Virus record (IMG/VR): IMGVR_UViG_3300044957_000763
Location: 186,001 to 250,000 of that record
Direction: 5' to 3' (one strand)
DNA length: 64,000 nt
The notes beneath the pieces are model-generated. The model searched no databases. It saw only the letters and a list, made by a program, of their open reading frames with translations, and was not told where the DNA came from. This document shows positions 25,976-48,464 of this stretch, piece by piece (position 1 is the stretch's first letter; the number at the start of each line of letters is the position of its first letter). The position numbers and the translations under genes were made by a program.

Positions 25976-26084
25976 CTGTGTTGCGCATTGATATTGCGCA
26001 ATCTATTAGACGTTATACAACGTCAAAAAGTTCCATGTTAGTCAAGTTTGTAGACTGGTTACTAGTCGCTACTCTATCGCAGAT

Positions 26085-26125: not shown

Positions 26126-26160
26126 TTGATGAACCACATCGGTCGTACCAACATGAAATC

Positions 26161-26303: not shown

Positions 26304-26308
26304 TAAAT

Positions 26309-26384
26309 TGGTCCTCCTGACCGGACTTGAACCGGCTACTTCCTGACAGACAATCAGGTGCTTCGACTCTTGAGCTTCAGAAGG
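26309..26384 (-). tRNA. Atypical tRNA-Asp(GUC)
   Basis: CCTGA-TT GTC TG-TCAGG; pyrimidine at position 37 and A73 are atypical for Asp. Confidence 0.6.
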
Positions 26385-26393
26385 ATAAATTGG

Positions 26394-27578
26394 CTACGCG
26401 GGCTTGATTATCTTGAGAGCTCTTTCCAAGTAAAAATCATATCGCCCTTCTTGTGAAACAATTGGTGCGCCTGGAGTGATGCCTGCGCATCCTTCCACAT
26501 ACACCCTGGCCTTATCATTGACATTATTGTGTGCCAAGTAGAAAAAGTCTTTGCTGGCTGGTCTTTCACCAATGCTGTACCATCCAAACTGCATTCCAGT
26601 AACATGAGTTCGGCAACAGTTTCGGAACGAGAACATAGCTCCTGGGGTGAACAGTCCGCTTTTTGCTCCAGTATACGGCATGAAGTCGTCAACTATCATG
26701 TCGGTGATACTGGCTGGTACGACAGTTGCCTGATATCCCCTTGAACTGCCATGCGAGAATAGAGACCCGCCGATTTCGTGTCTTCCGCCGTGAGCGTAAA
26801 ATGGGAATCCTCCATCAACTCTAAATATCAAATTGACATAGGAGGTTCCAAAATTCACCACGTACATGCCGCTACTGCCGCTATTTGGCAATTTGTCTGT
26901 TCCAAAAACATTGATGCCTATGAGACAGCCACTTGCATTGCAACTGTCCATTTTGTTTGCAAGAGTGTTTCCGCCTACGAATTGGTATCCAATATGACCT
27001 CTGTCAATTATGTCAGTGGTAATGAGTTTGTAGTCACCACCACCAATAGTATCACTATACGCTTCGCACTTAGTTAATTCTATACTAGATACATCAGCAG
27101 AGCCATTAGGCCATATTTCGTTGCTACCAACCAGGAATCCGGTGCTATTTTTACTACCGGTCATGAACTGCACTCGGCACCCCAGTAACTGCATATTGCT
27201 GGTTGATTGAACATCTGCGTCAACCCCGATTTCAAAACCTACCTGCTTATTGCCAAATGTTCGAACACAAACATCTGTGACTCTAACACGCTTAGTTCCG
27301 ATAAACCTAAACGCTGAGGTTCCATCTGCGCCTCGATAATTTATCAAATTCCAAAACGGGTCTGCAACAATATTGCCCTGTAGGTAGTCACCTGGTGTTG
27401 AAGACTTGAACGTGATGGTTTTGTCTATAGTCCACTCGCGCCCAATCCACGGAATATACAGTTGTTTTCCTGTGCCTTTATTGAACTCAGCGGCAGCAGC
27501 AAGAAACTTTTCTGTGTCTGACGCACCAGGCATTTGCGATACGTCAATGATTTTAGCGGAAGTAGTGGAGTTTAGCAT
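26394..27578 (-). CDS. Pectate-lyase-like beta-helix protein (tailspike/depolymerase-like)
   Basis: N-terminal DVSQMPGASDTEKFLAAA..QLYIP, repetitive beta-strand pattern. Confidence 0.6.
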   Translation of the reverse strand: MLNSTTSAKIIDVSQMPGASDTEKFLAAAAEFNKGTGKQLYIPWIGREWTIDKTITFKSSTPGDYLQGNIVADPFWNLINYRGADGTSAFRFIGTKRVRVTDVCVRTFGNKQVGFEIGVDADVQSTSNMQLLGCRVQFMTGSKNSTGFLVGSNEIWPNGSADVSSIELTKCEAYSDTIGGGDYKLITTDIIDRGHIGYQFVGGNTLANKMDSCNASGCLIGINVFGTDKLPNSGSSGMYVVNFGTSYVNLIFRVDGGFPFYAHGGRHEIGGSLFSHGSSRGYQATVVPASITDMIVDDFMPYTGAKSGLFTPGAMFSFRNCCRTHVTGMQFGWYSIGERPASKDFFYLAHNNVNDKARVYVEGCAGITPGAPIVSQEGRYDFYLERALKIIKPA

Positions 27579-27646
27579 GCGTCATCATTAGCCGATGACT
27601 TGTTTCATGCCTGCAAAACTCAAATCTATAGGCCATATGGCAAATC

Positions 27647-27802
27647 TTAATCTTCGTCAACAGCCTTGGATGCCCTAATGAATCTGCGCCAAAGGCTATC
27701 AATCCTCCACGAGCCTCCGCCATGTGCGGAATCGGTCTTACGATTACGAAAATGCAATCGGTCTCTTTTGCGATTGCCGTTCTTTTTCTTGTAATTAGCC
27801 AT
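27647..27802 (-). CDS. Small basic hypothetical protein (51 aa)
   Basis: Manual translation MANYKKKNGNRKRDRLHF...KAVDED. Confidence 0.45.
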   Translation of the reverse strand: MANYKKKNGNRKRDRLHFRNRKTDSAHGGGSWRIDSLWRRFIRASKAVDED

Positions 27803-27820
27803 TGTTCTTCGCTTAAAACT

Positions 27821-27896
27821 TGGCGCGGATGACGGGTACTGACCCCGCTATCTGTTGCGTGACAGGCAACCGGATTAACCATCTTCCTCCACCCGC
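27821..27896 (-). tRNA. tRNA-Asp(GUC)
   Basis: GTTGC-CT GTC AC-GCAAC, G73, CCA; atypical T loop GTCAGTA. Confidence 0.75.
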
Positions 27897-27914
27897 GCAT
27901 ATGATTGGCATTAT

Positions 27915-27994
27915 TGGTGCCGGTCAAGACCTTACTCTACATCCTCACAGAGTCTTAGACTCTGTGAGGCGCCTCTGGTTATAGAGGAACCGGC
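27915..27994 (-). ncRNA. tRNA-like RNA with double-length anticodon arm (UAA) and degenerate T arm
   Basis: GCCGGTT/GACCGGC-A-CCA, D-like CCTC/GAGG, perfect CCTCACAGAGTC/GACTCTGTGAGG hairpin. Confidence 0.5.
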
Positions 27995-28163
27995 GTTTGT
28001 TGGGGCGGCAATTGCTCACCGCCCTATTCCCTATGGATTAACTTGAACAAGTTTACTATGTCCGACCGCACCAGATTATTCTAGCTTTTCCAGTTTCGCT
28101 TGGTGGCCACAAGGTTCAGCTTCTTTTGATGTGCACTTAGCCTCACGAGCTTGTTCGAAGATG

Positions 28164-28192
28164 ATTATACCACAAGACCATTCGTTTGTCAA
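28164..28192 (-). promoter_or_regulatory. Consensus sigma70-type promoter inside the tRNA array
   Basis: TTGACA-17 nt-TATAAT with TG at the extended -10 position. Confidence 0.8.
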
Positions 28193-28206
28193 TAGTGCTT
28201 GGGTTT

Positions 28207-28431
28207 TTACACCAAAAGCACATTCATATCGTTTGGGACACGGTCTCCAGTGGCATTGTAATACGCTTCTTGTGCTTTTTGTAGCACTTCGAGCCAGTGA
28301 GCATTCTCGTCATCTGGATTAAACGCTTCGCCATCATGTGCATCGAGATATTGTTCAGTATTGTCGTTCTCAATCATCAGTCTCAATGCCGCAAGAACTT
28401 CTTCGTTGATTTCGTTCATATGTTCCATCAT
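28207..28431 (-). CDS. Hypothetical acidic protein
   Basis: 74-aa ORF. Confidence 0.55.
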   Translation of the reverse strand: MMEHMNEINEEVLAALRLMIENDNTEQYLDAHDGEAFNPDDENAHWLEVLQKAQEAYYNATGDRVPNDMNVLLV

Positions 28432-28656
28432 ACCTTATTCTTTAGGTCGATTTCCACTATAACCGTCTGTTACAAAGCAGTTTTCTGGTGCCTTTTCAAT
28501 GAAATGCTTTGCCTTGAGCGCAGAGTAAAATTTGCGTATATCGCCTTTGTAATACTGGACACCGCCATGCTTACAGTCTCGAACGCATTTGACATAGAAA
28601 ACTTTTCTATTCACACGGTTGATTTATGAGCGAATTGCGTTTTTACCTGTGAAAAA

Positions 28657-28746
28657 TGGAGGAACGGGTGGGATTCGAACCCACGGAACGCTTTCACGTT
28701 CACTTCTTTAGCAAAGAAGCTGAATAAACCTCTCTCGCACCGTTCC
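28657..28746 (-). tRNA. tRNA-Ser(GCU)
   Basis: CTTCT-TT GCT AA-AGAAG, long V-arm, CCA. Confidence 0.9.
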
Positions 28747-28752
28747 GAAATC

Positions 28753-28841
28753 TGGAGGAGAGCAACGGAATTGAACCGTAGCCACTTGCGCGGCCGTAAC
28801 GCTTTCCAGGCGTACCCCATCACCGTCAGGGATTACTCTCC
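28753..28841 (-). tRNA. tRNA-Ser(GGA)
   Basis: Loop CT GGA AA, long V-arm, CCA. Confidence 0.9.
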
Positions 28842-28861
28842 ATATTGGCATTATACAAATC

Positions 28862-28949
28862 TGGCGGAACGCAGAGTACTCGAAACTCAACCCTTTCAGG
28901 TCCCATCCCTTAGCAGGGGAGGCAGGTTCGCCTGTCCTGTTTACGCTCC
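28862..28949 (-). tRNA. tRNA-Ser(GCU)
   Basis: Loop CT GCT AA, long V-arm, G73, CCA. Confidence 0.85.
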
Positions 28950-28954
28950 ATATT

Positions 28955-29025
28955 TGGTGGCAACTTGTGGTCTCGAGCCACAACACCGGCCCTGGGGCCG
29001 GCTGTCCGTCCTACCGGACGTCGCC
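28955..29025 (-). ncRNA. 71-nt degenerate tRNA-like RNA
   Basis: GGCGAC/GTTGCC-A-CCA, TCCG/CGGA, CCGGC/GCCGG with 6-nt loop, TGTGG-CTCGAGA-CCACA. Confidence 0.45.
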
Positions 29026-29031
29026 AAATTC

Positions 29032-29120
29032 TGGCGGATAGCTGGGGAGTCGAACCCCAAAGGCCTTATCAGCTCACCTGTTTTCGAAACAGTTCCCATC
29101 ACCCATTGGGTTGGCTATCC
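29032..29120 (-). tRNA. tRNA-Ser(CGA)
   Basis: Loop TT CGA AA, long V-arm, G73, CCA. Confidence 0.9.
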
Positions 29121-29263
29121 ATTTGTTTCCGGGTGGCTCCCCACCCGGAGGTAATTCAGCGCACTGAACCACCAATTTCGACCGAAGGTCATAACGCTGT
29201 TCTCACGAACTGGCCTCGCGCCGCGACAGAGGAAGTCTTCAGTCCTCTGCAACTATTATACCA

Positions 29264-29350
29264 CGGCGGAAGCAGTGGGAATCGAACCCACGAAACCTTT
29301 CAGTTCAGGCCGCTTCAAACGGCTGTCCTCGTCCGTGCCGGGCTACTTCC
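29264..29350 (-). tRNA. tRNA-Ser(UGA)
   Basis: Loop TT TGA AG, long V-arm, G73. Confidence 0.8.
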
Positions 29351-29372
29351 GCTGTGGTTTGTTGATAAATCT

Positions 29373-29445
29373 GGAGAGGCTAACGGGAATCGAACCCGTG
29401 TCTTAACATTGGCAATGTTATGTATTACCGCTATACGATAACCTC
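29373..29445 (-). tRNA. tRNA-Gly(GCC)
   Basis: TAACA-TT GCC AA-TGTTA, U73, CCA. Confidence 0.9.
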
Positions 29446-29457
29446 GTTTTTGCTCAG

Positions 29458-29529
29458 AGCGGAAGACGGGATTCGAACCCGCAACTTCTTGCCTGGCAGG
29501 AAAGCACTCTACCATTGAGTTACATCCGC
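29458..29529 (-). tRNA. tRNA-Gly(GCC)
   Basis: GCGGATG acceptor, loop CT GCC AG, CCA not encoded. Confidence 0.8.
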
Positions 29530-29538
29530 ACTGAGCAT

Positions 29539-29907
29539 TTATTCTTCTTGTTCCATGTTTAGTTTACGACCTTCGGCTGCGCTGGTTGCAGTGTTTTTGG
29601 TTTGCCATAGACCAATTCCAATTATCGCACCTAGAATCAAGGCAAGTATCAATCCTTGTTTTATCGCACTCAACCACAGTTCCGCAGAAGACAGTTGTCC
29701 AGACCAGCTTAGTCCTGAGTGACTTCCAGGACCAATAACTGGAGCGTATTTAAGCAAGACCCATTTACCATTAACCCATAAGAATTCGTTTTCTTTGCAG
29801 CAATCACACAATTCATCTGACCACAAGTGCGCGTTACCCATTGGGCACTTTCGATATAACAGCGGTAGAACCACTGTTATCACACTTGCCATTCTGCCTG
29901 TAATCAT
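29539..29907 (-). CDS. Hypothetical membrane protein
   Basis: C-terminal hydrophobic helix; start uncertain. Confidence 0.5.
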   Translation of the reverse strand: MITGRMASVITVVLPLLYRKCPMGNAHLWSDELCDCCKENEFLWVNGKWVLLKYAPVIGPGSHSGLSWSGQLSSAELWLSAIKQGLILALILGAIIGIGLWQTKNTATSAAEGRKLNMEQEE

Positions 29908-30299
29908 CCCAGTGAAATTCCATATTCTGCCGGAAGAGCATTATATTCTGTCCATTCTGCAAAGCAACTTTTACACAGTGTCTTAAGCCACCCTGCTCGC
30001 CGGCAAAGTGCGCCTGGTTCGCCACAACATTCACATGTCTTTGCGGCTAACTTTTCTGCCCCTTCGATAATTTCATACACTTGGTCAAAAACATTTTCTT
30101 GTAAAGCACCAATGTAGTAACGCAATCCACCGAACTTTTCCTTGATTTGCAAGATTGTGTAATCAGGTGCCAGCTTTCTAATGTCTTTGTCAAGCTGTGC
30201 AATGATTGGATACCAACCAGCATCGCATTCAAGAAAAACATTTCTTCGACCGCCGTCCCAATGGTGTTTAAGTTGTTGCTCAAGTTGTTCTTTGGTCAT
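29904..30299 (-). CDS. Conserved phage hypothetical protein
   Basis: CDAGWYPII...QIKEKFGGLRYY...CECCG...WLKTLC. Confidence 0.75.
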   Translation of the reverse strand: MTKEQLEQQLKHHWDGGRRNVFLECDAGWYPIIAQLDKDIRKLAPDYTILQIKEKFGGLRYYIGALQENVFDQVYEIIEGAEKLAAKTCECCGEPGALCRRAGWLKTLCKSCFAEWTEYNALPAEYGISLG

Positions 30300-30308
30300 T
30301 GTTTTCCT

Positions 30309-30746
30309 CTAAGGTGTATTGATTCCAGCAAGGCCAAGCAATCTTTCCTGCTCGGCAATTGGCAACTTCTTGAATTGCTCTGACAATGATTCCACTTTCT
30401 TTTTTCTTTTCTCTCTTTGCTCTTGTGCCTTGCGTTTCTTGTCCCACTTTTGATGTTTTTCCCACCAGTCAGCAAGAGACCGCGCATTGGCATTCTTTCC
30501 ATCGTAGATGTACTTGTCTTGTTCGGCCGCAGACATGATTCTGATTGTACTGCACAGCAATGCAGTCCAGTTGTCTACTTCTGACTGATTGCCATAATAC
30601 TCACTCGCGGCGGTTTTCCATGCATCAGTTTCAGCCTTAGTGGGTTTCAGTCCGATAGCAGGAAGCAAATACAAAAGATGACCAGCAACACGCTTCGACT
30701 CTGCTTGGCGTGCGTTTGGTTCGGAGTAATCTGTACGACATGGCAT
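30309..30746 (-). CDS. Conserved phage hypothetical protein
   Basis: MPCRTDYSEP...LADWWEKHQKWDKKR; start moved downstream of the tRNA. Confidence 0.7.
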   Translation of the reverse strand: MPCRTDYSEPNARQAESKRVAGHLLYLLPAIGLKPTKAETDAWKTAASEYYGNQSEVDNWTALLCSTIRIMSAAEQDKYIYDGKNANARSLADWWEKHQKWDKKRKAQEQREKRKKKVESLSEQFKKLPIAEQERLLGLAGINTP

Positions 30747-30799
30747 AACATAACCATTATAACACACTGGTTTCAAGTTGTCAAGTGCCTTTGTAAATT

Positions 30800-30875
30800 T
30801 GGCGCCCCAGGACGGACTCGAACCGCCGTCTCTTACGTTCGAAGCGTAAGTTTCTATCCACTGAATTACTGGGGC
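30800..30875 (-). tRNA. tRNA-Arg(UCG)
   Basis: TTACG-CT TCG AA-CGTAA, CCA. Confidence 0.9.
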
Positions 30876-30881
30876 AAATTT

Positions 30882-30968
30882 TGGTGGCTCTCCCCGGACT
30901 CGAACCGGGACGCTTTGTGGGCACGATATTTTGAGTATCGCATGTACTACCAATTTCATCAGAGAGCC
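30882..30968 (-). tRNA. tRNA-Leu(CAA), with V-arm
   Basis: CGATA-CT CAA AA-TATCG, A73, CCA. Confidence 0.9.
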
Positions 30969-30974
30969 GAAATC

Positions 30975-31049
30975 TGGAGGCCGGGGTGGGACTCTAACCC
31001 ACGCTCTTTCACTTTGCAGGCGAACGCCTTAACACTTGGCTACCCGGCC
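30975..31049 (-). tRNA. tRNA-Cys(GCA)
   Basis: TTCGC-CT GCA AA-GTGAA, T loop TTAGAGT, U73, CCA. Confidence 0.85.
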
Positions 31050-31064
31050 GGTTGTTCTTAAATT

Positions 31065-31148
31065 TGGTGCCGCACCTCGGAATCGAACCGAGACAAGAGG
31101 ATGATTTTAAGTCATTTGCTTTTACCAGTTTAGCTACTCCAGTGCGGC
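31065..31148 (-). tRNA. tRNA-Leu(UAA) with 5-nt insertion after the acceptor stem and no V-arm
   Basis: GCCGCAC-TGGAG-TA-D arm; loop CT TAA AA; V region CTCTTGT. Confidence 0.75.
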
Positions 31149-31173
31149 ATTGTTTATATGTAAGCGCAAAACT

Positions 31174-31250
31174 TGGTGCTCCTACTCAGATTCGAACTGA
31201 GACTTTCATAGGTTTGAGCTATGTGACTCTACCAATTGGCCTATAGGAGC
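31174..31250 (-). tRNA. tRNA-Leu(CAA) lacking V-arm
   Basis: CATAG-CT CAA AC-CTATG, 5-nt V loop, A73, CCA. Confidence 0.85.
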
Positions 31251-31252
31251 AT

Positions 31253-31338
31253 TGGTGCGGATGAGAGGACTTGAACCTCCAAGGGGTTTCCCCCACAGCC
31301 GTCTCAGGACTGCGCGTTTACCATTTCGCCACATCCGC
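31253..31338 (-). tRNA. tRNA-Leu(GAG)
   Basis: Loop CT GAG AC, V-arm, CCA. Confidence 0.9.
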
Positions 31339-31343
31339 AAAAT

Positions 31344-31427
31344 TGGACCGGGTAAAAGGACTTGAACCTTCACGTCTTTCGACAAATGCTCCTAAGGCAT
31401 TCGCGGCTACCGTTACGCCATACCCGG
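31344..31427 (-). tRNA. tRNA-Leu(UAG)
   Basis: AATGC-CT TAG GA-GCATT, V-arm, U73 (atypical). Confidence 0.85.
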
Positions 31428-31431
31428 ATTT

Positions 31432-31517
31432 TGGTCTCGATGACCGGATTTGAACCAGCACGCTTTGTGGGCGCTACCACCTCAAGGTAGTGCGTCTACC
31501 AATTTCGCCACATCGAG
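31432..31517 (-). tRNA. tRNA-Leu(GAG)
   Basis: CTACC-TT GAG GT-GGTAG, V-arm, CCA. Confidence 0.85.
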
Positions 31518-31523
31518 ATATTT

Positions 31524-31601
31524 TGGTCCCCCCTGCGAGACTCGAACTCGCAATACTTTCGGTTCTGAGCCGAACGACTTTACCAATTTGCCCAAAGGGG
31601 G
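31524..31601 (-). tRNA. tRNA-Leu(CAG) lacking V-arm
   Basis: TTCGG-CT CAG AA-CCGAA, short V loop, CCA. Confidence 0.85.
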
Positions 31602-39587: not shown

Positions 39588-41930
39588 TCATACTTTGTCA
39601 TTAGTTATTTTTTTGATTTCATGATTGATTTTGACTGGATAACGAATCGGCCTATCGTTGATTATTGTTTTTTCGTGCTTCTCTGATTCCAAAAGCAATT
39701 TATCTTTTTGTTTTCTGGATATAGATTCTTCGTGATGCCTGAGTTTTATGGGAGTAAGAATTCTTTGGTAGTCCGCATGGGTGTCATAGTTCCATATGTA
39801 TCCAGCGCAGTTTTTAGGACCAGCAAATGGTCTTTCTTTATTTACCATACCTGTCTTTTGTGCCCTAAGAGTATAGTCTATGTGCTCGCTACCATAAAAC
39901 CCAAAATCAGTACACAATCCGCCGAGCGCGTCGTACATTGATTTCGTGAAGAACAATAAAGCACCATATGCTTTGTTATAGCACTCTATTCCATTGGGCT
40001 GTTCAGTAATAGTGTTGTGATAATTGTTTCCGTACAACAAATGCTGGTACCCACTTTGTTGGTGTGCGTCAATATATAGCTCCATCCAACCGTTGTCTAT
40101 TGGAAATGTATCGTCATCAAATAGAAAATAGTAACTGTAAGAATCTCCTAACAAATACAGGCAACTGTTTTTTGCCTGAGCGATACCAACCTGCTCCGCT
40201 CCATAATAATAGTTGTCATCCAGTTCGTACTTCTTTACGATTGCCTGATTCTTCAATCTTAGTGCCGGGTCGCTTGCGTCGTCGTAAATTACAAGGTGTT
40301 TTAATTGGTCTTCAGTGCTGTATGTCTTGAAGTGCAGTAAACACGCGTCCAGCATATCTGGCCTATTACGTGTTGTAATGGCTATTCCTGAATTTGCTGT
40401 TATGTGTTGCAAGACTATGTTTTGATTGCACTCGAGATTATCATTGGGTAATCCAACATAGTCTACTTCTGGTATGTCGAATAATACATTGTATTCTGGG
40501 GGGCAGTAAACATAAATTCTTGACAAAGGCATGTTTCTTCGCTTTTCTTTGATTTGCTTGAGTGCGCTAATAGAGTTGTGTATTGGTCCGTTAAAATGAA
40601 GTGAAACATGCACTCCAAATCCAAGATAACCATATCTGTCTGCAAACAATTGTTTGTTGTCTAAAATGTATTTTTGTAAATTAGGTAACAGTTTTGACGT
40701 TTGTCCTTGTAGGTGCCTCATGGTGTTTGGCACTCCTGTCCATGTGTATCCTTTTAATCTGGCTCGACACGACCAATCGGTGTCTTCAAAATAGGCCATC
40801 TCATAGCTTTCATCAAATTCTCCAATGTTAAACCACACATCGCGCCTAAAAAACAACGCTTCTCCATTCGCATAGTCGCTATTTGCGAAATGCAAAGTCT
40901 GTGTTCCACCAATAAAGTTCGGGCTTGCTTTCATCATACTGGCGCATGATATACCACTTCGAATTGCCTCGGTATACAGTCTTGCAATACCACCAGGAAA
41001 TAACTCAACATCATTGTTGAGAACTGCTAATACTTTACCAGTTGCTTGATTCAATCCAGCATTCCATGCCCTTGAAACACCCTCATTCTTGGTGTTGTCA
41101 ATGACCTTGACACCTGATAGCGTTTTCAGCCATTGCCTAGTGCCGTCCGTGCTGGCATTATTTACTACAATGATTTCAGAACACGGGGCTTCTGTTTTTA
41201 ACTGCTCAAGCAGTTTTTGGGTACAAAATATGTTGTTGTAAACAGCAATTACAATAGATAACTCAGGCAACAGCTTAGACTGATGTGCGCGTATGTTATC
41301 ACTATTGTTTTTGCTTTGGTACCAATACCAGCGATACATATTCAGGTTGTCTTTGAAACTTTGGGTGTGTGGGTTTCCGGGTGATAAATGTTGCACTTTA
41401 ATATCGCATACCCAATTGTAATACCCCATGTCCTCGGTTTGTCTACACATCCACGCATCTAATAAATGAATGCCAGGCAATATTTCCGGGAACATCAACC
41501 TTTTGTCAGTAACCATGAAAACAGCATCTATAGTTCGGGCCATGCAATCCGTTTGACCGAAACACAACCACTCTCCTTGTTCCTTGACCCCGCCAAGGAA
41601 TGAATTTGCAGATTCATTGAACCATACTCCTCTTTGGTTGTTATTGACAGTACCTGCAATTCCAGCGAGTCCAATTTCTGGATGTTTTGCAAAAGTGCCA
41701 ATCACCTTTGCTGTGAAATTTTCGTCAATTAAGCGGGCATCTTGATGGCAATACACAAGGTACCTGCCCTTGGCTTGTTCGGTGCCTGCGTTATATGCCT
41801 GTGACATAGACTGATATTCTTGACCAAGTTCTATAAACTCGCAATCGACACCATCAAAAGACGCCACCATATCTTGATACAGTTCTTGATTGTTGACCCA
41901 ACTGATTACACTAAATAGAGGCGGCCGCAT
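39588..41930 (-). CDS. Multi-domain glycosyltransferase (glycosyltransferase-like plus two GT2 domains)
   Basis: YNAG..AKGRYLVYCHQD; IVVNNASTDGT..NEGVSRAWNAG..LNNDV; YFEDTDW; GIAQAKN..FLFDDDT. Confidence 0.9.
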   Translation of the reverse strand: MRPPLFSVISWVNNQELYQDMVASFDGVDCEFIELGQEYQSMSQAYNAGTEQAKGRYLVYCHQDARLIDENFTAKVIGTFAKHPEIGLAGIAGTVNNNQRGVWFNESANSFLGGVKEQGEWLCFGQTDCMARTIDAVFMVTDKRLMFPEILPGIHLLDAWMCRQTEDMGYYNWVCDIKVQHLSPGNPHTQSFKDNLNMYRWYWYQSKNNSDNIRAHQSKLLPELSIVIAVYNNIFCTQKLLEQLKTEAPCSEIIVVNNASTDGTRQWLKTLSGVKVIDNTKNEGVSRAWNAGLNQATGKVLAVLNNDVELFPGGIARLYTEAIRSGISCASMMKASPNFIGGTQTLHFANSDYANGEALFFRRDVWFNIGEFDESYEMAYFEDTDWSCRARLKGYTWTGVPNTMRHLQGQTSKLLPNLQKYILDNKQLFADRYGYLGFGVHVSLHFNGPIHNSISALKQIKEKRRNMPLSRIYVYCPPEYNVLFDIPEVDYVGLPNDNLECNQNIVLQHITANSGIAITTRNRPDMLDACLLHFKTYSTEDQLKHLVIYDDASDPALRLKNQAIVKKYELDDNYYYGAEQVGIAQAKNSCLYLLGDSYSYYFLFDDDTFPIDNGWMELYIDAHQQSGYQHLLYGNNYHNTITEQPNGIECYNKAYGALLFFTKSMYDALGGLCTDFGFYGSEHIDYTLRAQKTGMVNKERPFAGPKNCAGYIWNYDTHADYQRILTPIKLRHHEESISRKQKDKLLLESEKHEKTIINDRPIRYPVKINHEIKKITNDKV

Positions 41931-42784: not shown

Positions 42785-42797
42785 TGTATAATCATAT

Positions 42798-42879
42798 TGT
42801 CTCATATTGGGGAATCTGGTGAGAATCCAGAACTGTATCGCAACGGTGTGTTGAAAGACGAGTCCGAATGCCAGAGACT
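42798..42879 (+). promoter_or_regulatory. Cobalamin riboswitch (compact)
   Basis: GGGAA-TCTGG-TGAGAAT-CCAGA-ACTG...CGCAACGGT...GAGTCCGAA-TGCC core; P1 GTCTC/GAGAC; TATAAT at 42787; SD-sequestering hairpin ACCCTC/GAGGGT downstream. Confidence 0.8.
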
Positions 42880-42958
42880 ATAATGCAAACCGCGAGTTAC
42901 GGTTGGGCTAGTTGAATCTGTTTGATTTCAACCCTCAATTTCACTCACGGAGGGTAAC

Positions 42959-44239
42959 ATGAAACAAAAAACTAACTGGATTCACCTCGCTGTCATTTTT
43001 TCAATGACGCTTCTTTGTCGATTGATGCCACATGAATGGGGTTGGGCACCCACCGTCGCCATGAGTGTGTTATCAACATGCTTGTTTGGTCTGCTGGCAT
43101 TACTCCCAATTTTGCTCGGGCAATTTTGCTCAGACCTTTATTTTGGATTTTACGATGCGCCGGCTATGATTGGGACATATGCCGGATATGTTATGGCTGG
43201 CATATGTGGTATTTGGGCTGGAAAAAAGCAGCAAACATTATCAACGATTGGCTTTGCGTTTACTGCATCTTCCGGCTTTTTTGTCTTGTCTAATTTTGGG
43301 GTTTGGATGACTCCGTATTATGAACACACTTTACAAGGTCTCTCAAATTGCTATGTGGCGGCTCTGCCGTTCTGGAAAAATCAACTCGTAGCTGATTTGT
43401 TTTTGTCAACAGCGACAGCGTTGATGTTGTTCTACAGACCAAAGACGAAGCCAATATATACAATGGCTCGTCGCAAAGCTGGTTTTACGCTCATAGAACT
43501 ACTCGTAGTCATTGCAATCATCTCGACTCTGGCTGCAATCCTCTTCCCTGTCTTTTCTCAGACTAAAGCGGCCGCGAAAAAGACTCAGTCGATTGCATAT
43601 ATCAAACAAATCAATCTGGCAAGCATGATGTACACAAATGACAATGATGGTATATTGATGCGTGACCACATCAATGGCAATGGCAAAACATACTATTGGT
43701 GGGGGAGTTGGGATGGTTCTGTATTGAACCAACAAGAAAGCTATCTTTATCCATACACAAAGAATCATGAAATAGCCAAAGACCCTGTTTTCCCAGATAC
43801 ATTCAGGACTGCACTTGGCCTAACTGGATATGGCTACAACTATGCATATTTGTCTCCTAGTAATTACGACTCAAACTGGAATGAAATACCAGTGTCAGTA
43901 TCTGATACGAGTGCCGGAAGTCCTATTGAGACAATCACATTCGCCACTGCTGCGCGCATTAACAACTGGTCTTTCAGTACATGGAAACTAGAGGGCAATG
44001 CGCTCATTGACCCACCTAGCTACGAATTCCCAGGAGTACATGCGAGACACGTTGGAAACAAAGCGATTTTGGCCTGGCTTGATGGTCACGCAAGTTCAAT
44101 CAGTGTGACTCAGAGAAGCCAAGCATTTGGATATGGATTTATCCCAGACTGGTTTGTTAAGTCCAATCTGGGCGATGTTATAAAGTCTGGTTGTGGCTTT
44201 GGTTCAGTCTGTCAGGACTACTACTACGACCTCGACTGA
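42959..44239 (+). CDS. Fusion of DUF6580-like membrane protein and prepilin-type N-terminal cleavage/methylation domain protein
   Basis: CRLMPHEWGWAPTVAM...FFVLSNFGVW...CYVAALPFWKNQL, then in frame RRKAGFTLIELLVVIAIISTLAAILFPVF...LAWLDGHA. Confidence 0.85.
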   Translation: MKQKTNWIHLAVIFSMTLLCRLMPHEWGWAPTVAMSVLSTCLFGLLALLPILLGQFCSDLYFGFYDAPAMIGTYAGYVMAGICGIWAGKKQQTLSTIGFAFTASSGFFVLSNFGVWMTPYYEHTLQGLSNCYVAALPFWKNQLVADLFLSTATALMLFYRPKTKPIYTMARRKAGFTLIELLVVIAIISTLAAILFPVFSQTKAAAKKTQSIAYIKQINLASMMYTNDNDGILMRDHINGNGKTYYWWGSWDGSVLNQQESYLYPYTKNHEIAKDPVFPDTFRTALGLTGYGYNYAYLSPSNYDSNWNEIPVSVSDTSAGSPIETITFATAARINNWSFSTWKLEGNALIDPPSYEFPGVHARHVGNKAILAWLDGHASSISVTQRSQAFGYGFIPDWFVKSNLGDVIKSGCGFGSVCQDYYYDLD

Positions 44240-44240
44240 G

Positions 44241-45413
44241 TTACTTGACGCCGAATACCGACTTCAGATACCTGAGGTATTCGGCGTCTTCACAAGTGGC
44301 CTTTTCGGGTTCGTCGCTGATTTTTGCTACGGGCTGACCGTTGCAACTTGCCATCTTCATTACAATGCTTACTGGCTTTACGTCGTCTCGGCATTTGTTG
44401 GTCAGATATGTTCCGATTCCACACGAGACGTTGATTTGGTCTCCCCATGTTTTGGTCAAATCGAAGGCACGTTCAAAATCAAGATTGTCGCTTGGAATCG
44501 CGGATTTCGTCTTAGGGTCGATGCGTAAAGACTTGTAGTGTCGGATAACTTTGTCAATAGTTACGTCCATATCACCAGAGTCAAGACGACATCCATCGTA
44601 CAGCTTGGCCAAATAAAGGTCAAAGTCATTCAAGAACGCATCAATGCCTATAGTATCGGTGAGTGCGTATCCAAGGTCGCCCCTGTATTCTGAAGACCAC
44701 GCTTCAAGCATGTATTTCTGGTGATTGGCAAGCCTGGTTTGCGGCATTCCTTGTCCGGCCATAATCCACTGATGTGCCATTGTGCCGATAGGATTTAGCC
44801 CATATTTCATGGCGAAGTAAACGTTTGATGTACCCACGAGGTGTTCGCCACACTGTCGCTTTAGGTCTTGCACAACTTGTTCGTGCCATGCTCGAGAAAG
44901 CCTTCGGCGGGTTCCAAATTCAGAGAATCTAAAATTCCCTGGCGCACGCATTTTGAATAGGTTAAGTTTTCGATTTTGGATTTCTTGGTCGCCCAGTGCA
45001 TCCGCAACACCGCACTGCATCTCTGTGTTTAATTCGCTCACAATAGCTAAGATTGGCACTTCCCAGTAAATGTTGTGCAGCCAACTTCCTGTTGCTGAAA
45101 TCTTTAGTTCACCCGAATCGTCTACGCGAACTGTAACATTTTCAGGGTTCGGTCTGAACATCCTCAAAAATTCAACATAGTCGCGCTTGATAAAACGCAA
45201 ACTGCCGATGAAGTCAAGTTCATCCTTGGTGTATGACAAGTCTCCCAATGCATTGATTTCATCACGAACTCGATTGGCTAATTTGTCCAGTCCGGCGCGT
45301 GGTGTGCGACAATTGAACTCGAAACGTGTTTGAGCTGCTGGGAATTGATGCAAAACTGCTTGTTGCATCGTACAAACATACAAATCCAAGTCTGCCAGTG
45401 AGCGGATAATCAT
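44241..45413 (-). CDS. pncB: Nicotinate phosphoribosyltransferase
   Basis: LADLDLY, EFGTRRR, GTSNV, GTMAHQW, ALTDT, RLDSGD, SDNLD, GIGT, KISDEPEKA. Confidence 0.95.
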   Translation of the reverse strand: MIIRSLADLDLYVCTMQQAVLHQFPAAQTRFEFNCRTPRAGLDKLANRVRDEINALGDLSYTKDELDFIGSLRFIKRDYVEFLRMFRPNPENVTVRVDDSGELKISATGSWLHNIYWEVPILAIVSELNTEMQCGVADALGDQEIQNRKLNLFKMRAPGNFRFSEFGTRRRLSRAWHEQVVQDLKRQCGEHLVGTSNVYFAMKYGLNPIGTMAHQWIMAGQGMPQTRLANHQKYMLEAWSSEYRGDLGYALTDTIGIDAFLNDFDLYLAKLYDGCRLDSGDMDVTIDKVIRHYKSLRIDPKTKSAIPSDNLDFERAFDLTKTWGDQINVSCGIGTYLTNKCRDDVKPVSIVMKMASCNGQPVAKISDEPEKATCEDAEYLRYLKSVFGVK

Positions 45414-45434: not shown

Positions 45435-45947
45435 TCAGGAGTTGTCAAGCACTTCTTGCGACGTTTTACAACACGCCACCATGTCCTCGCCGGCTTCATG
45501 TGCGCAATCTCTCATTGAAACAAGGTCTTTGCTTGTGATTGGCATGCTAAATTCTTTGCACACCGCGCGATAAGTTTGTATTTTCTTTTGCTTGGCTTGT
45601 TGAAGCCGGGCATGTAATACAGCCAGTTCTTCTTCAATTTGTGCTATTTCACATTCAATCTCTTCAATTTGTTTAATACCAATAGGATTGGTGACAGCGT
45701 GGATACTATCGTTATATTGATGAAAGTTAATACGGTCCATCCAGTTGCTTGGGTTTTGAGCACCGTTGTTAGTCAGGCCCCATCTTCCCCTTGAGCGTTC
45801 AAGAACCCCGGAATTGTATGTTGGTGAGACCCACAATGTATCACCCTTTTCACCCCAGTGTGTTATGAAAACCAAAGGGTGACCCTTGGGCCAATGATAC
45901 TCAATCGGATTAGAGCCGTATATTCTTTTTACGGATTCAGGCATCAT
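45435..45947 (-). CDS. Hypothetical coiled-coil protein
   Basis: ORF starting MMPESVKR after TATAAT; divergent from 45978. Confidence 0.65.
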   Translation of the reverse strand: MMPESVKRIYGSNPIEYHWPKGHPLVFITHWGEKGDTLWVSPTYNSGVLERSRGRWGLTNNGAQNPSNWMDRINFHQYNDSIHAVTNPIGIKQIEEIECEIAQIEEELAVLHARLQQAKQKKIQTYRAVCKEFSMPITSKDLVSMRDCAHEAGEDMVACCKTSQEVLDNS

Positions 45948-45980
45948 GTTATTATACCGCGCACGTGCTATAATAACATG
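45945..45980. promoter_or_regulatory. Symmetric back-to-back leaderless promoters
   Basis: Perfect 12-bp inverted repeat CATGTTATTATA/TATAATAACATG; each side reads TATAAT-AAC-ATG-ATG. Confidence 0.65.
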
Positions 45981-46742
45981 ATGAAGCCCAAATACGAAGA
46001 TATGGATGCAACATTGCGCTTGGTCAAAGGTGGCAAGCTCTATTACAGAAAGTGGTTTATGGATGAGCGACAAGGAGAGGTCTTTGATATTACCGACCGA
46101 CCGATTAGATTCTTGATGTATGATTGTGAACTAGATGCAGGCGTTACTTTACGAGATGTGTTTGACCTAATCGAAGCAAACATAGACGACCTGGAGCCAA
46201 TTTTGGGGAACTGGGTAAAGGAGTTTGTGGATGAATCCAAGCAACCATATGAGCCCGGCGAAGACAGGGAGATGGAGAGTTTGGAAATGTACTGGTTCCT
46301 GGAATCTGACGCAGAGTTCGGCACAGATGGCATGGCGTTCCCCTCCTTTCATGGTATTGGAAAGAACGGCGAGAAGTATGGAGTCGATTTTTCTTCTTGT
46401 CATACACTGATGGAATTGCCGCTTAAACTGAAGGCAGACGCAGAAATGTACCGCCGCGATTATAGGCACAAATCAGACGGTTCGTCAACTATTACATTGC
46501 CTAAGGTTGGGTACACACTCATGCATATTTTGTATGGAATCATCTGGGAACTTTCATTTTTCGGACCGCCCAAGAAACGAGACGAAGAGGTCAAGAAGTT
46601 GATGAACATAGCAGAAGACGCCAAACTGCATCCTGAAAAACTCATACCTTTAGATGAAGTTTTGAAAAAAATTGAGGCAAAACAAGAAAATCCAAAAAAA
46701 GACAATCAGGGCCTTGACAACGCAAATACCGATGTGGTTTAA
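45978..46742 (+). CDS. Conserved phage hypothetical protein
   Basis: VTLRDVFDLI...ILYGIIWELSFFGPPKKRDE. Confidence 0.75.
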   Translation: MMKPKYEDMDATLRLVKGGKLYYRKWFMDERQGEVFDITDRPIRFLMYDCELDAGVTLRDVFDLIEANIDDLEPILGNWVKEFVDESKQPYEPGEDREMESLEMYWFLESDAEFGTDGMAFPSFHGIGKNGEKYGVDFSSCHTLMELPLKLKADAEMYRRDYRHKSDGSSTITLPKVGYTLMHILYGIIWELSFFGPPKKRDEEVKKLMNIAEDAKLHPEKLIPLDEVLKKIEAKQENPKKDNQGLDNANTDVV

Positions 46743-46804
46743 TCAATCTTCAAACGCAATCGACTACTCGACACGAGTTTTGAAGAAATGTGTATAATAA
46801 ACAC

Positions 46805-47815
46805 AGCACTTTGACAGTTTAATAGAATTTCGGCGGTATGGCGTCGGACAAAAAGATATTGCATCGCAAGATGCAGAAAGGGACCAGGTTCTTCAGACCC
46901 CCGCCTTGTAAGTTCGCTTATGAGGTCAGCCATGCAAGTCCAACTTCCTTGGGTTTCGCGCTTCACGGTGCGGAACTAAGCCCCCGCGAAGGGGCGCGAC
47001 AGAAGATGGAGGATAAATGTTGTCAGTGGCCTGGCCGACGGTGAAGCCATTGACAATCATGACACGGCAGTGTCATAAAACCTCACGCAAAACATCGGTG
47101 TCTAAGAAGTCAAGGATAGCCTCGGGGTTCGAGTTGTTGCAGACAAGGGCTTCGTGAGATTTACCTTCGGGTACTTCTTTAGCATAACCAAAGGCAAGAG
47201 CATTGCGGTATAGAATGTAACAGTGGTTACACACTGACCTATTCCATGATGCAGGCGTCTTGAAGTTGAGCAGAGTAGCACGGCAATGTGAAATGTAATA
47301 TTCGGCGTGTTGTATTCGGTAGACCGAAAGGTTTATGGAGCAGCAGCGCGCGCACGTCGAACTGAAGTAGCAAACTAGCTCATTCGGTAGAGCAGTTCCT
47401 TTCAACGGAACAGGTAGTTGGTTCAAGCCCAACGCTTGCAAAAATGCGAAAGCCGCGTGCCGCACAAAACGAAAATGGCTTACTTCCTGAGTGGCAACAT
47501 GTCAGGAGCGACGACAACTCGCAAGGTTGTGGTTGTGTTGGTGAGAACGAAAGATGGTGGGGAGCCCCCCTTTACTGCCCGGCAGGGTAGACGGCAATTA
47601 GAACTTGCTCAGTAGTTTTGTGAACAGGCTCGATAAGCCAATCGAGCATAAACAATGGCAGTCATGCCGACTGACTGGTAGCAATACCAGTGGACAAGCT
47701 GGCAAGCGATGCGCAGACATCGTGTAATCCAGTATGGCGAGTCGGATATGTAGGTGTAGTCTCGACCTGCATGCAGTCCCAGAACCCTGGCCTTGTGTCA
47801 GAGTTCTGGGACTTT
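46805..47815 (+). ncRNA. Giant structured ncRNA, GOLLD-like
   Basis: TGTGTATAAT at 46789-46798; ~1 kb rich in UUCG/GNRA-capped hairpins; embedded tRNA-like element; intrinsic terminator at the 3' end. Confidence 0.65.
47369..47441 (+). tRNA. tRNA-like element with UCA anticodon embedded in the giant ncRNA
   Basis: GCTC-ATTCGGTA-GAGC D arm, GTTCC-TT TCA AC-GGAAC, GTTGG-TTCAAGC-CCAAC; acceptor 5/7 paired, no CCA. Confidence 0.6.
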
Positions 47816-47820
47816 TTTGT
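47775..47820 (+). terminator. Intrinsic terminator
   Basis: AGTCCCAGAAC/GTTCTGGGACT followed by a T-tract. Confidence 0.8.
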
Positions 47821-47996
47821 TTGTCTATTGACATAGGTTTTGATATGTGCTAGAGAAGCCACCATCCAGCTTGCTCAATCGGAAAACACCAAGATTGTGG
47901 TTATTGGTCAGGGCAAGGACGGACTGCCTTTGATTCTCAGCGGCGCAGACAAATAAGCTGTTGATATTTGTGCGGGTATGTGGTAGTATTCACACC

Positions 47997-48464
47997 ATGG
48001 ATGCAACTACATATCCCGCCTCTTTTTTAGACGTTCCACCATCAGAGCGGCGGCCAATGACAGAAGATGAAACCAAGAGCTTTATGTCGGCTATTTTGGC
48101 AGACCTTCAAGATAACAAACCTGGTGACTTTTCTAACATTGAGGGCACTCTTACGTATGCCACTATTGTTCACAGACTGAAGACTGCCGGCGTTAATTTA
48201 AGCGTCGGTGGTCTTTTGGGTCTAGTGGCCTGGACTAACGGCCGACCTGGAGATATGGTGATGTGGGCATACACCGCCAGTCAAATTGCAAAGTCGTCTG
48301 GTACCAAGCTGATTACATGTAATGATTTGGTGGAGGCTTTTCCTTTTGGTATTCCAACTGAAGAAGCTCGCAAGAAGATTTGGGAAGCGCAGAAAGTACC
48401 ATTCGATGAAATCAAAAATGGCATGTCTGACAATTATTTGGATATGCTCGAATTCTGGTCGTGA
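47997..48464 (+). CDS. Hypothetical protein
   Basis: ORF from MDATTYPA. Confidence 0.7.
   Translation: MDATTYPASFLDVPPSERRPMTEDETKSFMSAILADLQDNKPGDFSNIEGTLTYATIVHRLKTAGVNLSVGGLLGLVAWTNGRPGDMVMWAYTASQIAKSSGTKLITCNDLVEAFPFGIPTEEARKKIWEAQKVPFDEIKNGMSDNYLDMLEFWS

What the first reader, a model, noticed from the sequence alone, without database searches (positions are those of the whole stretch)
46805..47815. About 1-kb giant structured ncRNA (GOLLD-like)
Bounded by an extended -10 promoter and a strong terminator, with no convincing plus-strand ORF. It is packed with hairpins capped by stable tetraloops on the plus strand: UGCAUC-GCAA-GAUGCA, GUAAG-UUCG-CUUAU, UACC-UUCG-GGUA, AGACC-GAAA-GGUUU, AUGACAC-GGCA-GUGUCAU, CUGGUA-GCAA-UACCAG, plus a 10-bp UGUCAGUGGC/GCCAUUGACA helix and possible long-range pairs (GGUCAG/CUGGCC, CUUCAC/GUGAAG). 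Established: GOLLD RNAs are ~800-nt phage- and tRNA-associated RNAs of unknown function. The 3' part (GUAGGUGUAGUCUCGACCUGC) resembles my recollection of GOLLD, which is unverified; if it is not GOLLD it is a new giant RNA.
Basis: partly seen in the sequence, partly recalled or inferred. Interest (0 to 1): 0.7.

Follow-up and report, generated by a model that had tools for sequence, protein, structure and literature searches.

The report
Divergent GOLLD RNA in huge phage
The roughly 1-kb gene-free stretch encodes a GOLLD RNA, a known class of giant phage noncoding RNA that builds RNA-only cages; this copy is divergent enough to fall below the standard database cut-off and carries a tRNA-like insert with a stop-codon-reading anticodon.

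Summary
Rfam's GOLLD model matches 47300-47768 end to end (112.9 bits, E 1e-30). That is under the curated cut-off of 150, so routine annotation would miss it. Thirteen of 15 IMG/VR relatives that align over the same 3' domain do pass the cut-off. The helices and a 7-bp pseudoknot covary with the window included. The 5' half (about 46827-47299) is the variable GOLLD 5' domain. Two covariance models built only from relatives each have their best hit in the 64-kb window there, and it folds better than shuffles on the + strand only. In four sludge or wastewater metatranscriptomes, contigs of a relative that differs at about 4-7% of positions cover 46827/46843 to 47768 and nothing outside, with compensatory base-pair changes. 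The linker holds a tRNA-like module (47368-47442) with anticodon UCA and a weak acceptor stem. The genome shows no TGA recoding. Across 81 GOLLD linker tRNAs the modules are swapped as cassettes or mutate in the anticodon loop; two of the sludge relatives have GAU in place of UCA. Verdict: a new, divergent member of a known family. Its function is still unknown, and cage formation is inferred only.

The parts
46768..46798 (+). Putative promoter: perfect -10 TATAAT at 46793-46798 with TG directly adjacent (46791-46792). The -35 is weak (TCGACA 46768-46773, 19-nt spacer). Predicted start of transcription is about 46805.
   Evidence: Read from the sequence. Not called by the consensus scan. Inferred only; relatives have sigma-70-like promoters at the equivalent place upstream of the first hairpin.
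46827..47299 (+). GOLLD 5' (variable, 'cap') domain. Includes the first hairpin 46831-46846, the GCAA hairpin 46860-46875, the 10-bp helix 47021-47030/47046-47055, hairpin 47059-47076, the long-range helix GUCC 46937-46940 / GGAU 47114-47117, helix 47207-47213/47239-47245, and the GAGUAGC...GCAA...GAAA motif at 47268-47295.
   Evidence: CM R1, built from 11 relatives without the window, has its best hit in the whole window at 46850-46946 (23.2 bits, E 0.0018). CM R2 has its best hit at 47143-47300 (17.1 bits, E 0.036). Threading on the relatives' consensus structure forms 40 of 57 pairs against 22.0 +/- 4.1 for shuffles. MFE z is -3.4 on the + strand only. Natural variants include compensatory changes. 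RNA-library contigs begin at 46827-46843.
47300..47768 (+). GOLLD conserved 3' ('ring') domain, matching Rfam RF02032 model positions 1-416.
   Evidence: cmscan gives 112.9 bits, E 1.4e-30, full model, below the cut-off of 150. nhmmer homology covers the full length of relatives, of which 13 of 15 score 157-230 bits. RNAalifold on 15 sequences including the window predicts 96 pairs, 69 with compensatory changes.
47346..47352 (+). 5' strand of a pseudoknot (GCGCGCG, in the internal loop of the first 3'-domain hairpin). It pairs with 47454-47460.
   Evidence: All 105 of 105 cells are paired across 15 sequences, with up to 4 pair types per column; slid controls give 31-41 of 105. The natural variant G47348A turns G-U into A-U.
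47368..47442 (+). tRNA-like module in the GOLLD linker, anticodon UCA (47402-47404). The D, anticodon and T arms are intact. The acceptor stem has 2 mismatches, and no CCA is encoded.
   Evidence: Rfam tRNA 50.1 bits. ARAGORN reports 'tRNA-SeC(tca)' with an 8-bp acceptor stem of which 6 pair. RNA-library contigs run across both junctions. Relatives carry different anticodons at the same site.
47454..47460 (+). 3' strand of the pseudoknot (CGCGUGC), just downstream of the linker.
47752..47768 (+). Invariant GOLLD 3'-terminal hairpin motif AGGUGUAGUCUCGACCU.
   Evidence: The pattern was found in 119 or more viral contigs. It is invariant in alignment A4 and matches model positions 398-416.
47775..47818 (+). 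Intrinsic terminator: 11-bp plus 5-bp stem 47775-47813, followed by UUUUUU.
   Evidence: -27.1 kcal/mol, z -5.0, 0 of 200 shuffles as good. RNA contigs end 6-15 nt past 47768, inside the 5' arm.

Best explanation
Window 46805-47818 (+) is a stand-alone gene for a GOLLD RNA in a complete 478.8-kb lake-water phage. It is probably transcribed from its own promoter and is ended by a strong intrinsic terminator, giving a noncoding RNA of about 960-1010 nt. The RNA has a variable 5' domain, a conserved 3' domain locked by a pseudoknot, and a linker between the first 3'-domain hairpin and the core that carries a tRNA-shaped module. The sequence and structural homology are shown, as is the existence of a discrete full-length RNA in close relatives. 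The rest is inferred by homology to the two GOLLD RNAs solved by cryo-EM (the env-38 14-mer and the Streptococcus agalactiae 12-mer). On that basis, copies of this RNA most likely self-assemble during infection into a hollow homo-oligomeric cage. The 3' domains would form the rings, the 5' domains the caps, and the linker with its tRNA-like module would point into the lumen. I take the UCA module to be a covalently held passenger or bait (stored, shielded or displayed in many copies) rather than a working opal-suppressor tRNA. What the cage does for the phage remains unknown. The confidence given (0.8) is for the whole statement: identity as a GOLLD RNA about 0.95, cage formation about 0.6, passenger rather than suppressor about 0.6.
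For: Identity: there is a full-length Rfam GOLLD match at E 1.4e-30 and it is the only such locus in the genome. Homologues of the same length pass the Rfam cut-off. RNAalifold predicts 96 pairs, 69 of them with compensatory changes. The pseudoknot is paired in 105 of 105 cells. The 5' domain is recognised by two independent CMs and by threading. Strand and RNA nature: the + strand alone folds better than shuffles. Single changes in relatives keep pairs as G-U, which works only on the + strand, and there are double compensatory changes G47022-C47054 to A-U and G47678-C47687 to A-U. Expression: in four RNA libraries from three studies, contigs of a relative differing at about 4-7% of positions cover only 46827/46843-47768; one 933-nt contig is essentially the whole RNA. 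Phage context: a 478,840-bp virus record with terminal repeats and 63 tRNAs. Cage formation and tRNAs in the linker are published for the family (bioRxiv 10.1101/2024.12.08.627333; PMC12990946). Passenger rather than suppressor: code 11 gives 90.5% ORF coverage, TGA ends 28% of ORFs, and there is no excess of TGA-split frames. The acceptor stem pairs at only 5 of 7 positions, against 7 of 7 in 52 of the phage's 62 free tRNAs. RNA contigs span both tRNA junctions. Two sludge relatives carry GAU where the window has UCA.
Against: The Rfam score is below the curated cut-off (112.9 against 150). The second 5'-domain CM hit is marginal (E 0.036) and aligns part of the region differently from my manual mapping. 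No reads from this phage itself in an RNA library were found; the expression evidence comes from relatives in sludge, and contigs carry no strand information. Oligomerisation, cage geometry and the inward-pointing linker are inferred from other GOLLD members and were not tested here. The promoter is a consensus guess, and RNA contigs start 22-38 nt downstream of the predicted start. In one RNA run (X21) a contig ends at 47444, the 3' end of the tRNA-like module, with a six-fold depth drop beyond it. This could mean processing and release of the tRNA end. The Rfam tRNA score of the module (50.1 bits) lies within the range of the phage's ordinary tRNAs, so a decoding role is not excluded.
Confidence: 0.8

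Rival explanations
1. The functional product is the embedded tRNA. The locus would then be a long tRNA precursor, with the GOLLD scaffold serving as a carrier or timer. RNase P and RNase Z would release an opal-suppressor tRNA(UCA) that lets ribosomes read through TGA in host or phage genes.
For: The module scores as a tRNA (50.1 bits) with intact D, anticodon and T arms, U33 and A37. The phage also carries an amber-type tRNA(CUA). In run X21 a contig ends exactly at the module's 3' end, with higher depth upstream. Published work proposes 'inhibited storage' of embedded tRNAs (PMC12990946).
Against: There is no sign of TGA reassignment or read-through genes in the genome. The acceptor stem has two mismatches, and across 81 linker tRNAs only 7 have a full 7-bp stem. 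Contigs in three of four RNA runs span both junctions. Two relatives that differ from the window at only about 5-6% of positions have GAU instead of UCA, which argues against a conserved suppressor role.
Confidence: 0.15
2. It is a new giant structured RNA family that only resembles GOLLD at its 3' end.
For: The score is below Rfam's gathering cut-off. The 5' half has no single-sequence nhmmer or BLAST match to 119 GOLLD loci.
Against: The match covers the full model at E 1e-30. An iterated profile links the window over the whole 3' domain to loci that pass the cut-off. The covarying helices and the pseudoknot are shared. Profile and CM searches recover the 5' domain in the correct order.
Confidence: 0.02
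3. The region is protein-coding: the antisense ORF 47073-47465 (130 aa) or a short + strand ORF is the real gene.
For: An open frame of 130 aa exists on the - strand.
Against: There is no Pfam match at E up to 1. The ORF overlaps the tRNA-like module and conserved RNA helices. Close relatives carry indels inside it (+G after 47160, +C after 47171, -1 at 47282, +T after 47367) that shift the frame. Substitutions preserve RNA pairs rather than codons.
Confidence: 0.01
4. It is a cis-acting leader or riboswitch controlling the downstream gene 47961-48464.
For: It lies upstream of a + strand ORF and is highly structured.
Against: A strong terminator with a U-tract ends the RNA 140 nt before that ORF, and a separate promoter-like site lies at 47961-47989. 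RNA contigs stop near 47768-47783. In relatives GOLLD sits in tRNA arrays with no conserved downstream gene.
Confidence: 0.02

Closest known systems
GOLLD RNA (Rfam RF02032; Weinberg et al. 2009), including env-38 GOLLD (833 nt, 14-mer cage, PDB 9MEE) and Streptococcus agalactiae GOLLD (700 nt, 12-mer, PDB 9L0R)
   Same: It shares the conserved 3' domain with the same helices, the pseudoknot and the invariant 3' hairpin; a variable 5' domain of about 470 nt; phage origin; an abundance of GNRA-type tetraloops; and transcription as a separate unit ended by a terminator.
   Different: The sequence is divergent (112.9 bits, below the Rfam cut-off of 150). It is longer (about 960-1010 nt) because of the tRNA-like insert and a larger 5' domain. 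It lies between orphan protein genes rather than inside a tRNA array. Oligomer state was not tested.
GOLLD RNAs with an embedded tRNA in J13/15 (for example Mycolicibacterium GOLLD with tRNA-Phe, Morgado et al. 2020, cited in PMC12990946; 'tRNAs sometimes present in the linker', bioRxiv 10.1101/2024.12.08.627333)
   Same: A tRNA-shaped module sits at the same linker position. 81 of 132 distinct GOLLD 3' domains sampled here have one.
   Different: The anticodon is UCA (opal-reading), unique among the 81 sampled. The acceptor stem is weakened. Two close relatives have GAU in the same place.
ROOL RNA (phage-associated, forms 6- to 8-mer cages)
   Same: It is likewise a giant ornate phage RNA near tRNAs that forms RNA-only cages.
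   Different: There is no sequence or structure match; no ROOL hit appeared in the Rfam scans.
Phage suppressor tRNAs in stop-codon-recoded phages (established knowledge, not tested against specific records here)
   Same: A tRNA-like element with a stop-reading anticodon in a very large phage that also has a tRNA(CUA).
   Different: This genome is best read with the standard code, and the element is embedded in a structured RNA with a weak acceptor stem.

Membership tests
GOLLD RNA (RF02032) | Covariance-model score at or above Rfam's gathering cut-off (150 bits) | tested here: not met
   112.9 bits, E 1.4e-30, model 1-416 of 416. The cut-off is a curators' annotation threshold, not a structural feature of the family.
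GOLLD RNA (RF02032) | Homology over the whole conserved 3' domain to accepted members | tested here: met
   An iterated nhmmer profile aligns the window over positions 1-458 together with loci of the same length. 13 of those 15 loci score 157-230 bits with Rfam.
GOLLD RNA (RF02032) | Conserved multi-helix secondary structure of the 3' domain supported by covariation | tested here: met
   RNAalifold on 15 sequences including the window predicts 96 pairs, 69 with compensatory changes. The window carries its own compensatory pair types. A natural variant changes G47678-C47687 to A-U.
GOLLD RNA (RF02032) | Pseudoknot joining the first 3'-domain hairpin to the strand after the linker | tested here: met
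   47346-47352 pairs with 47454-47460: 105 of 105 cells are paired across 15 sequences, against 31-41 when slid. I could not confirm that this is the same pseudoknot as drawn in the original paper.
GOLLD RNA (RF02032) | Invariant 3'-terminal hairpin AGGUGUARUCUCNNCCU | tested here: met
   Present at 47752-47768.
GOLLD RNA (RF02032) | Large, less conserved 5' domain upstream of the 3' domain | tested here: met
   The CM R1 hit (E 0.0018) and R2 hit (E 0.036) are each the best in the 64-kb window and lie in the right order. Threading forms 40 of 57 pairs against 22 +/- 4. R2 is marginal.
GOLLD RNA (RF02032) | Encoded by phages or prophages, associated with tRNAs | tested here: met
   The record is a 478,840-bp virus with terminal repeats. 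A tRNA-like module lies inside the RNA, and an array of 29 tRNAs ends about 15 kb away.
GOLLD RNA (RF02032) | Exists as a discrete, abundant RNA | tested here: inconclusive
   Shown for a relative differing at about 4-7% of positions in four metatranscriptomes, where contigs are bounded at 46827/46843 and 47768. Not shown for this phage itself, and the contigs carry no strand.
GOLLD RNA (RF02032) | Self-assembly into a homo-oligomeric RNA cage (10- to 14-mer) | not testable with these tools
   Known from cryo-EM of two members (bioRxiv 10.1101/2024.12.08.627333; PMC12990946). The RNA exceeds the size limit of the complex predictor.
Functional opal-suppressor tRNA | Fully paired 7-bp acceptor stem | tested here: not met
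   5 of 7 pairs (6 of 8 in ARAGORN's model), with A-A and A-C mismatches. 52 of the phage's 62 free tRNAs have 7 of 7.
Functional opal-suppressor tRNA | The genome shows TGA read as sense | tested here: not met
   Code 11 coverage is 0.905 against 0.889 with TGA as sense. TGA ends 142 of 515 ORFs. In-frame ORF pairs split by TGA are not in excess.
Functional opal-suppressor tRNA | Processing to a mature tRNA and aminoacylation | not testable with these tools
   RNA contigs span both junctions in 3 of 4 runs. One run has a contig end at 47444.

The most novel reading that the evidence does not exclude
The tRNA-shaped module in the GOLLD linker is not an ordinary tRNA gene but a fast-evolving, exchangeable 'bait' displayed in many copies by the RNA cage. 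Three results support this. First, among 81 linker modules the acceptor stems are mostly imperfect. Second, near-identical scaffolds carry unrelated cassettes: L212 and L208 are 99.2% identical outside the module and 58% inside it. Third, in two lineages the anticodon loop changes several times faster than the rest of the RNA (the window has UCA where two sludge relatives have GAU; L233, L228 and L218 have UAU, UAG and AUG). The commonest anticodons are GUU, UUU and CUU (Asn and Lys). From my own knowledge, these are the tRNA species attacked by several known anticodon nucleases and tRNA-targeting defence systems. GOLLD cages could therefore act as decoys, or as shielded reserves of tRNA, in an arms race with host tRNA-cleaving defences. 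On this reading the window's UCA copy is one variant in that diversification.
Probability: 0.25. Interest if true: 0.7.

Novelty: new member of a known kind. Interest (0 to 1): 0.4.

Why it matters
The result explains a conspicuous 1-kb gene-free stretch in a huge phage as a member of a known family whose function is still unsolved. It also shows that GOLLD RNAs extend below Rfam's cut-off, so surveys that use the curated threshold undercount them, also in very large phages. The locus gives a full-length, naturally bounded construct (promoter to terminator) with a tRNA-like insert for structural work. Natural variants from metatranscriptomes support its fold. The family-wide pattern seen along the way bears directly on the open question of what these cages are for, and it can be tested. 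That pattern is cassette exchange, rapid anticodon-loop change and weak acceptor stems in linker tRNAs.

Tried and rejected
1. BLAST of the region against 50,697 phage records found no match.
2. A search for relatives through the downstream protein in viral contigs found no relative. The flanking ORFs have no Pfam or PHROG family, so there is no conserved protein partner to follow.
3. A single-sequence nhmmer or BLAST search with the 5' half against GOLLD loci found nothing beyond the last 45 nt or so. Only profiles and CMs reached it.
4. Lineage-specific pattern scans failed. The viral-contig scan found none.
5. DNA runs with partial word shares turned out to hold the same phage at low depth, with identical short contigs, so they gave no new variants and no long-contig control.
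6. Alternative genetic codes (TGA or TAG as sense) were rejected: they give no gain in coding coverage.
7. An idea that the anticodon pairs with the loop 47031-47045 (UGAA there against UUCA in the anticodon loop) was not supported. One relative with a GAU anticodon has AUC inserted in that loop, but another with GAU does not.
8. My first acceptor-stem count was wrong, because ARAGORN's 3' ends vary. It was redone with a register search and controls.
9. The MFE register of helix 47209-47217/47240-47248 is contradicted by natural variants. The register 47207-47213/47239-47245 fits them (plus reading of the sequence).

Full report
**What is there**

The stretch 46743-47960 lies between two + strand ORFs of unknown function (45858-46742 and 47961-48464) and holds no convincing ORF. 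The region ends in a strong intrinsic terminator: stem 47775-47813 followed by six U, -27.1 kcal/mol, z -5.0. The consensus scan missed this terminator because its loop is long and internally paired. Upstream there is a perfect TATAAT at 46793-46798. The TG lies directly against it rather than one base away, and the -35 is poor, so 'extended -10' is only approximately right and the promoter remains a prediction. The window is bases 186001-250000 of a complete 478,840-bp virus record with direct terminal repeats. DNA runs place this phage in lake water and freshwater sediment.

**Identity**

At Rfam's curated thresholds the window shows only tRNAs and one cobalamin riboswitch. A permissive scan of the region gives a full-length match to GOLLD (RF02032) at 47300-47768 on the + strand: 112.9 bits, E 1.4e-30, model 1-416 of 416. 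This is below the gathering score of 150. It is the only such locus in the genome.

An iterated nhmmer profile found the GOLLD 3' domain in 63 of them. About 16 form a subfamily with the same length as the window, roughly 460 nt. Thirteen of 15 members tested pass Rfam's cut-off at 157-230 bits.

In a 15-sequence alignment that includes the window, RNAalifold predicts 96 pairs, 69 of them with compensatory changes. A 7-bp pseudoknot joins window 47346-47352 to 47454-47460. It is paired in all 105 cells, with up to four pair types per column, against 31-41 cells when the partner is slid. Membership in GOLLD is therefore secure despite the sub-threshold score.

**The 5' half**

[quoted passage not shown] The window's 5' half has no single-sequence match to other GOLLD loci. 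The 5' regions of twelve subfamily members do align with one another and have a covarying structure: 57 pairs, 45 with compensatory changes.

- Profile HMMs of those regions hit the window weakly but in the right order.
- Threading the window onto their consensus structure forms 40 of 57 pairs, against 22.0 +/- 4.1 (maximum 33) for 100 dinucleotide shuffles.
- Two covariance models were built from the relatives alone and run with filters off over the whole 64-kb window on both strands. Each has its best hit in the expected place: 46850-46946 (23.2 bits, E 0.0018; next best 0.79) and 47143-47300 (17.1 bits, E 0.036; next best 2.4). The second is marginal.
- The 5' half folds at -162.2 kcal/mol on the + strand (z -3.4) but only -140.1 (z -1.7) on the - strand.

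**Evidence from sequencing runs**

Four lake-water metagenome runs hold the stretch completely. Other freshwater runs hold identical fragments at low depth.

Four metatranscriptome runs from sludge and wastewater, from three studies, hold a relative that differs from the window at about 4-7% of aligned positions. Their contigs begin at 46827-46843 and end at 47768 plus 6-15 nt, with nothing on either flank. One 933-nt contig is essentially the whole RNA. Because the contigs themselves stop there, this looks like a discrete RNA of about 940 nt rather than contaminating DNA. The contigs carry no strand information, and the evidence concerns a relative, not this phage.

The differences behave as expected for a structured RNA read from the + strand:

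- G47022-C47054 becomes A-U, and G47678-C47687 becomes A-U.
- In the helix 47207-47213/47239-47245, A47210-U47242 becomes U-A and A47212-U47240 becomes G-C.
- Several A-U or G-C pairs become G-U, which would be mismatches on the other strand.
- Indels at 47160, 47171, 47282 and 47367 destroy the antisense ORF 47073-47465, which also has no Pfam match.

**The embedded tRNA-like module**

The linker between the first 3'-domain hairpin and the core contains a tRNA-shaped element at 47368-47442 (Rfam tRNA 50.1 bits). It has anticodon UCA with U33 and A37. The D, anticodon and T arms are intact, the acceptor stem has A-A and A-C mismatches, and no CCA is encoded. tRNAs in the GOLLD linker are already described (both papers above).

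ARAGORN's label 'SeC' reflects only the anticodon; there is no long variable arm. The genome does not use TGA as a sense codon. The standard code gives 90.5% ORF coverage, reading TGA or TAG as sense gives no gain, TGA ends 142 of 515 long ORFs, and frames split by a single TGA are not in excess. Contigs in three of the four RNA runs cross both junctions of the module, so much of the RNA is not processed there. One run has a contig ending at 47444 with lower depth beyond it, which I cannot explain.

**Family-wide pattern in the linker tRNAs**

A second scan raised the sample to 132 distinct GOLLD 3' domains, of which 81 have a linker tRNA call. They carry at least 17 anticodons. GUU (27), UUU (16) and CUU (7) are the commonest, and UCA occurs only in the window.

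- Acceptor stems are mostly imperfect. Seven of 81 have 7 pairs, 33 have 6, 32 have 5 and 9 have 4. By contrast 52 of the 62 free tRNAs in this phage have 7.
- Near-identical scaffolds carry unrelated cassettes with sharp borders. L212 and L208 are 99.2% identical outside the module and 58% inside; L179 and L176 are 98.7% and 62%.
- In two lineages the same tRNA body carries different anticodons. L233, L228 and L218 have UAU, UAG and AUG. The window has UCA, where two of the four sludge relatives have all three bases changed to GAU.
- Over 14 close pairs, differences per site are 0.31 in the anticodon, 0.21 in the rest of the loop, 0.087 in the rest of the tRNA and 0.067 in the rest of the 3' domain. 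These pairs are not independent, and one clade dominates.

I read this as relaxed or diversifying selection on a module that is not an ordinary decoding tRNA. This is an inference.

**How it most likely works**

Shown: it is a GOLLD RNA gene with both domains, the pseudoknot and a linker module, and relatives exist as full-length RNAs.

Inferred from the solved structures of env-38 and S. agalactiae GOLLD: many copies assemble into a hollow cage, with the 3' domains as rings, the 5' domains as caps and the linker facing the lumen.

Open: what the cage does. I favour a role in holding or displaying the tRNA-like module over a role as a suppressor tRNA precursor. I give the suppressor rival 0.15.

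**Verdict**

This is a new, divergent member of a known family in a huge phage. It is not a new kind of RNA. Interest is moderate. The most novel reading left open is that linker tRNAs are exchangeable, fast-evolving baits, or shielded tRNA reserves, in a conflict with host tRNA-targeting defences.

Noticed in passing
window 42796-42881 (+) and ORF 42959-44239 (+): An AdoCbl-II (cobalamin) riboswitch (40.7 bits, above its cut-off of 36.5) sits directly upstream of a phage ORF that has a DUF6580 domain and a prepilin-type N-terminal methylation motif. A cobalamin riboswitch in a phage genome is unusual.
   Followed up: partly
window 19077-31601 (-): An array of 29 tRNA genes on the minus strand. 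Several are unusually long for their type, for example Ile(tat) at 94 nt (19077-19170), Thr at 83-86 nt and Asp at 81 nt. They may carry insertions or introns.
   Followed up: no
genome G000:C1:157728-157803 and 144131-144485 (outside the window): The phage has 63 tRNAs in total. These include an amber-type tRNA(CUA), which ARAGORN calls 'Pyl', and there is also a tmRNA (tag ANNNFALAV). Even so, the standard code fits the genome best.
   Followed up: partly
window 44241-45413 (-) and 39588-41930 (-): A nicotinate phosphoribosyltransferase gene (NAD salvage) and a 780-aa protein with two family-2 glycosyltransferase domains. Both look like auxiliary metabolic genes of the phage.
   Followed up: no
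L212 vs L208; L179 vs L176 (linker, about positions 60-135 of the 3' domain): GOLLD scaffolds that are 98.7-99.2% identical outside the linker carry tRNA cassettes that are only 58-62% identical, with different anticodons (UUU against GUU). The borders are sharp, after GUAGGUU and before AAAA. This indicates cassette exchange.
   Followed up: yes
L233, L228, L218 (linker tRNA anticodon loop); window 47402-47404 vs runs X10 and X21: The same tRNA body carries different anticodons in near-identical GOLLD RNAs (UAU, UAG, AUG; and UCA against GAU). The anticodon loop changes about 3-5 times faster per site than the rest of the RNA in 14 close pairs, which are not independent.
   Followed up: yes
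L076 and L107, linker: The linker module has the anticodon loop UUCUAAG, an amber-reading CUA anticodon. ARAGORN did not call it, but Rfam scores L076's copy as a tRNA (58.8 bits). This is a second stop-reading linker module in the family.
   Followed up: partly
window 47444, run X21: In one metatranscriptome a contig ends exactly at the 3' end of the tRNA-like module. Word depth is 35.8 upstream and 5.6 further downstream. This could be processing at the tRNA 3' end or just an assembly break.
   Followed up: no
window 47370-47439, run X13: An oligo-dT wastewater RNA-seq run holds a 248-nt contig at word depth 1026, against 14 for the full-length relative. It comes from another GOLLD-like RNA and spans that RNA's linker tRNA and both flanks, so some GOLLD relative is very abundant there.
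   Followed up: no
contig lengths listed for loci L043, L199, L174, L175, L180, L181, L219, L223: Many pattern-matching GOLLD loci come from viral contigs of 300-578 kb, so GOLLD appears common in huge phages. I did not confirm a GOLLD domain for each locus individually.
   Followed up: no
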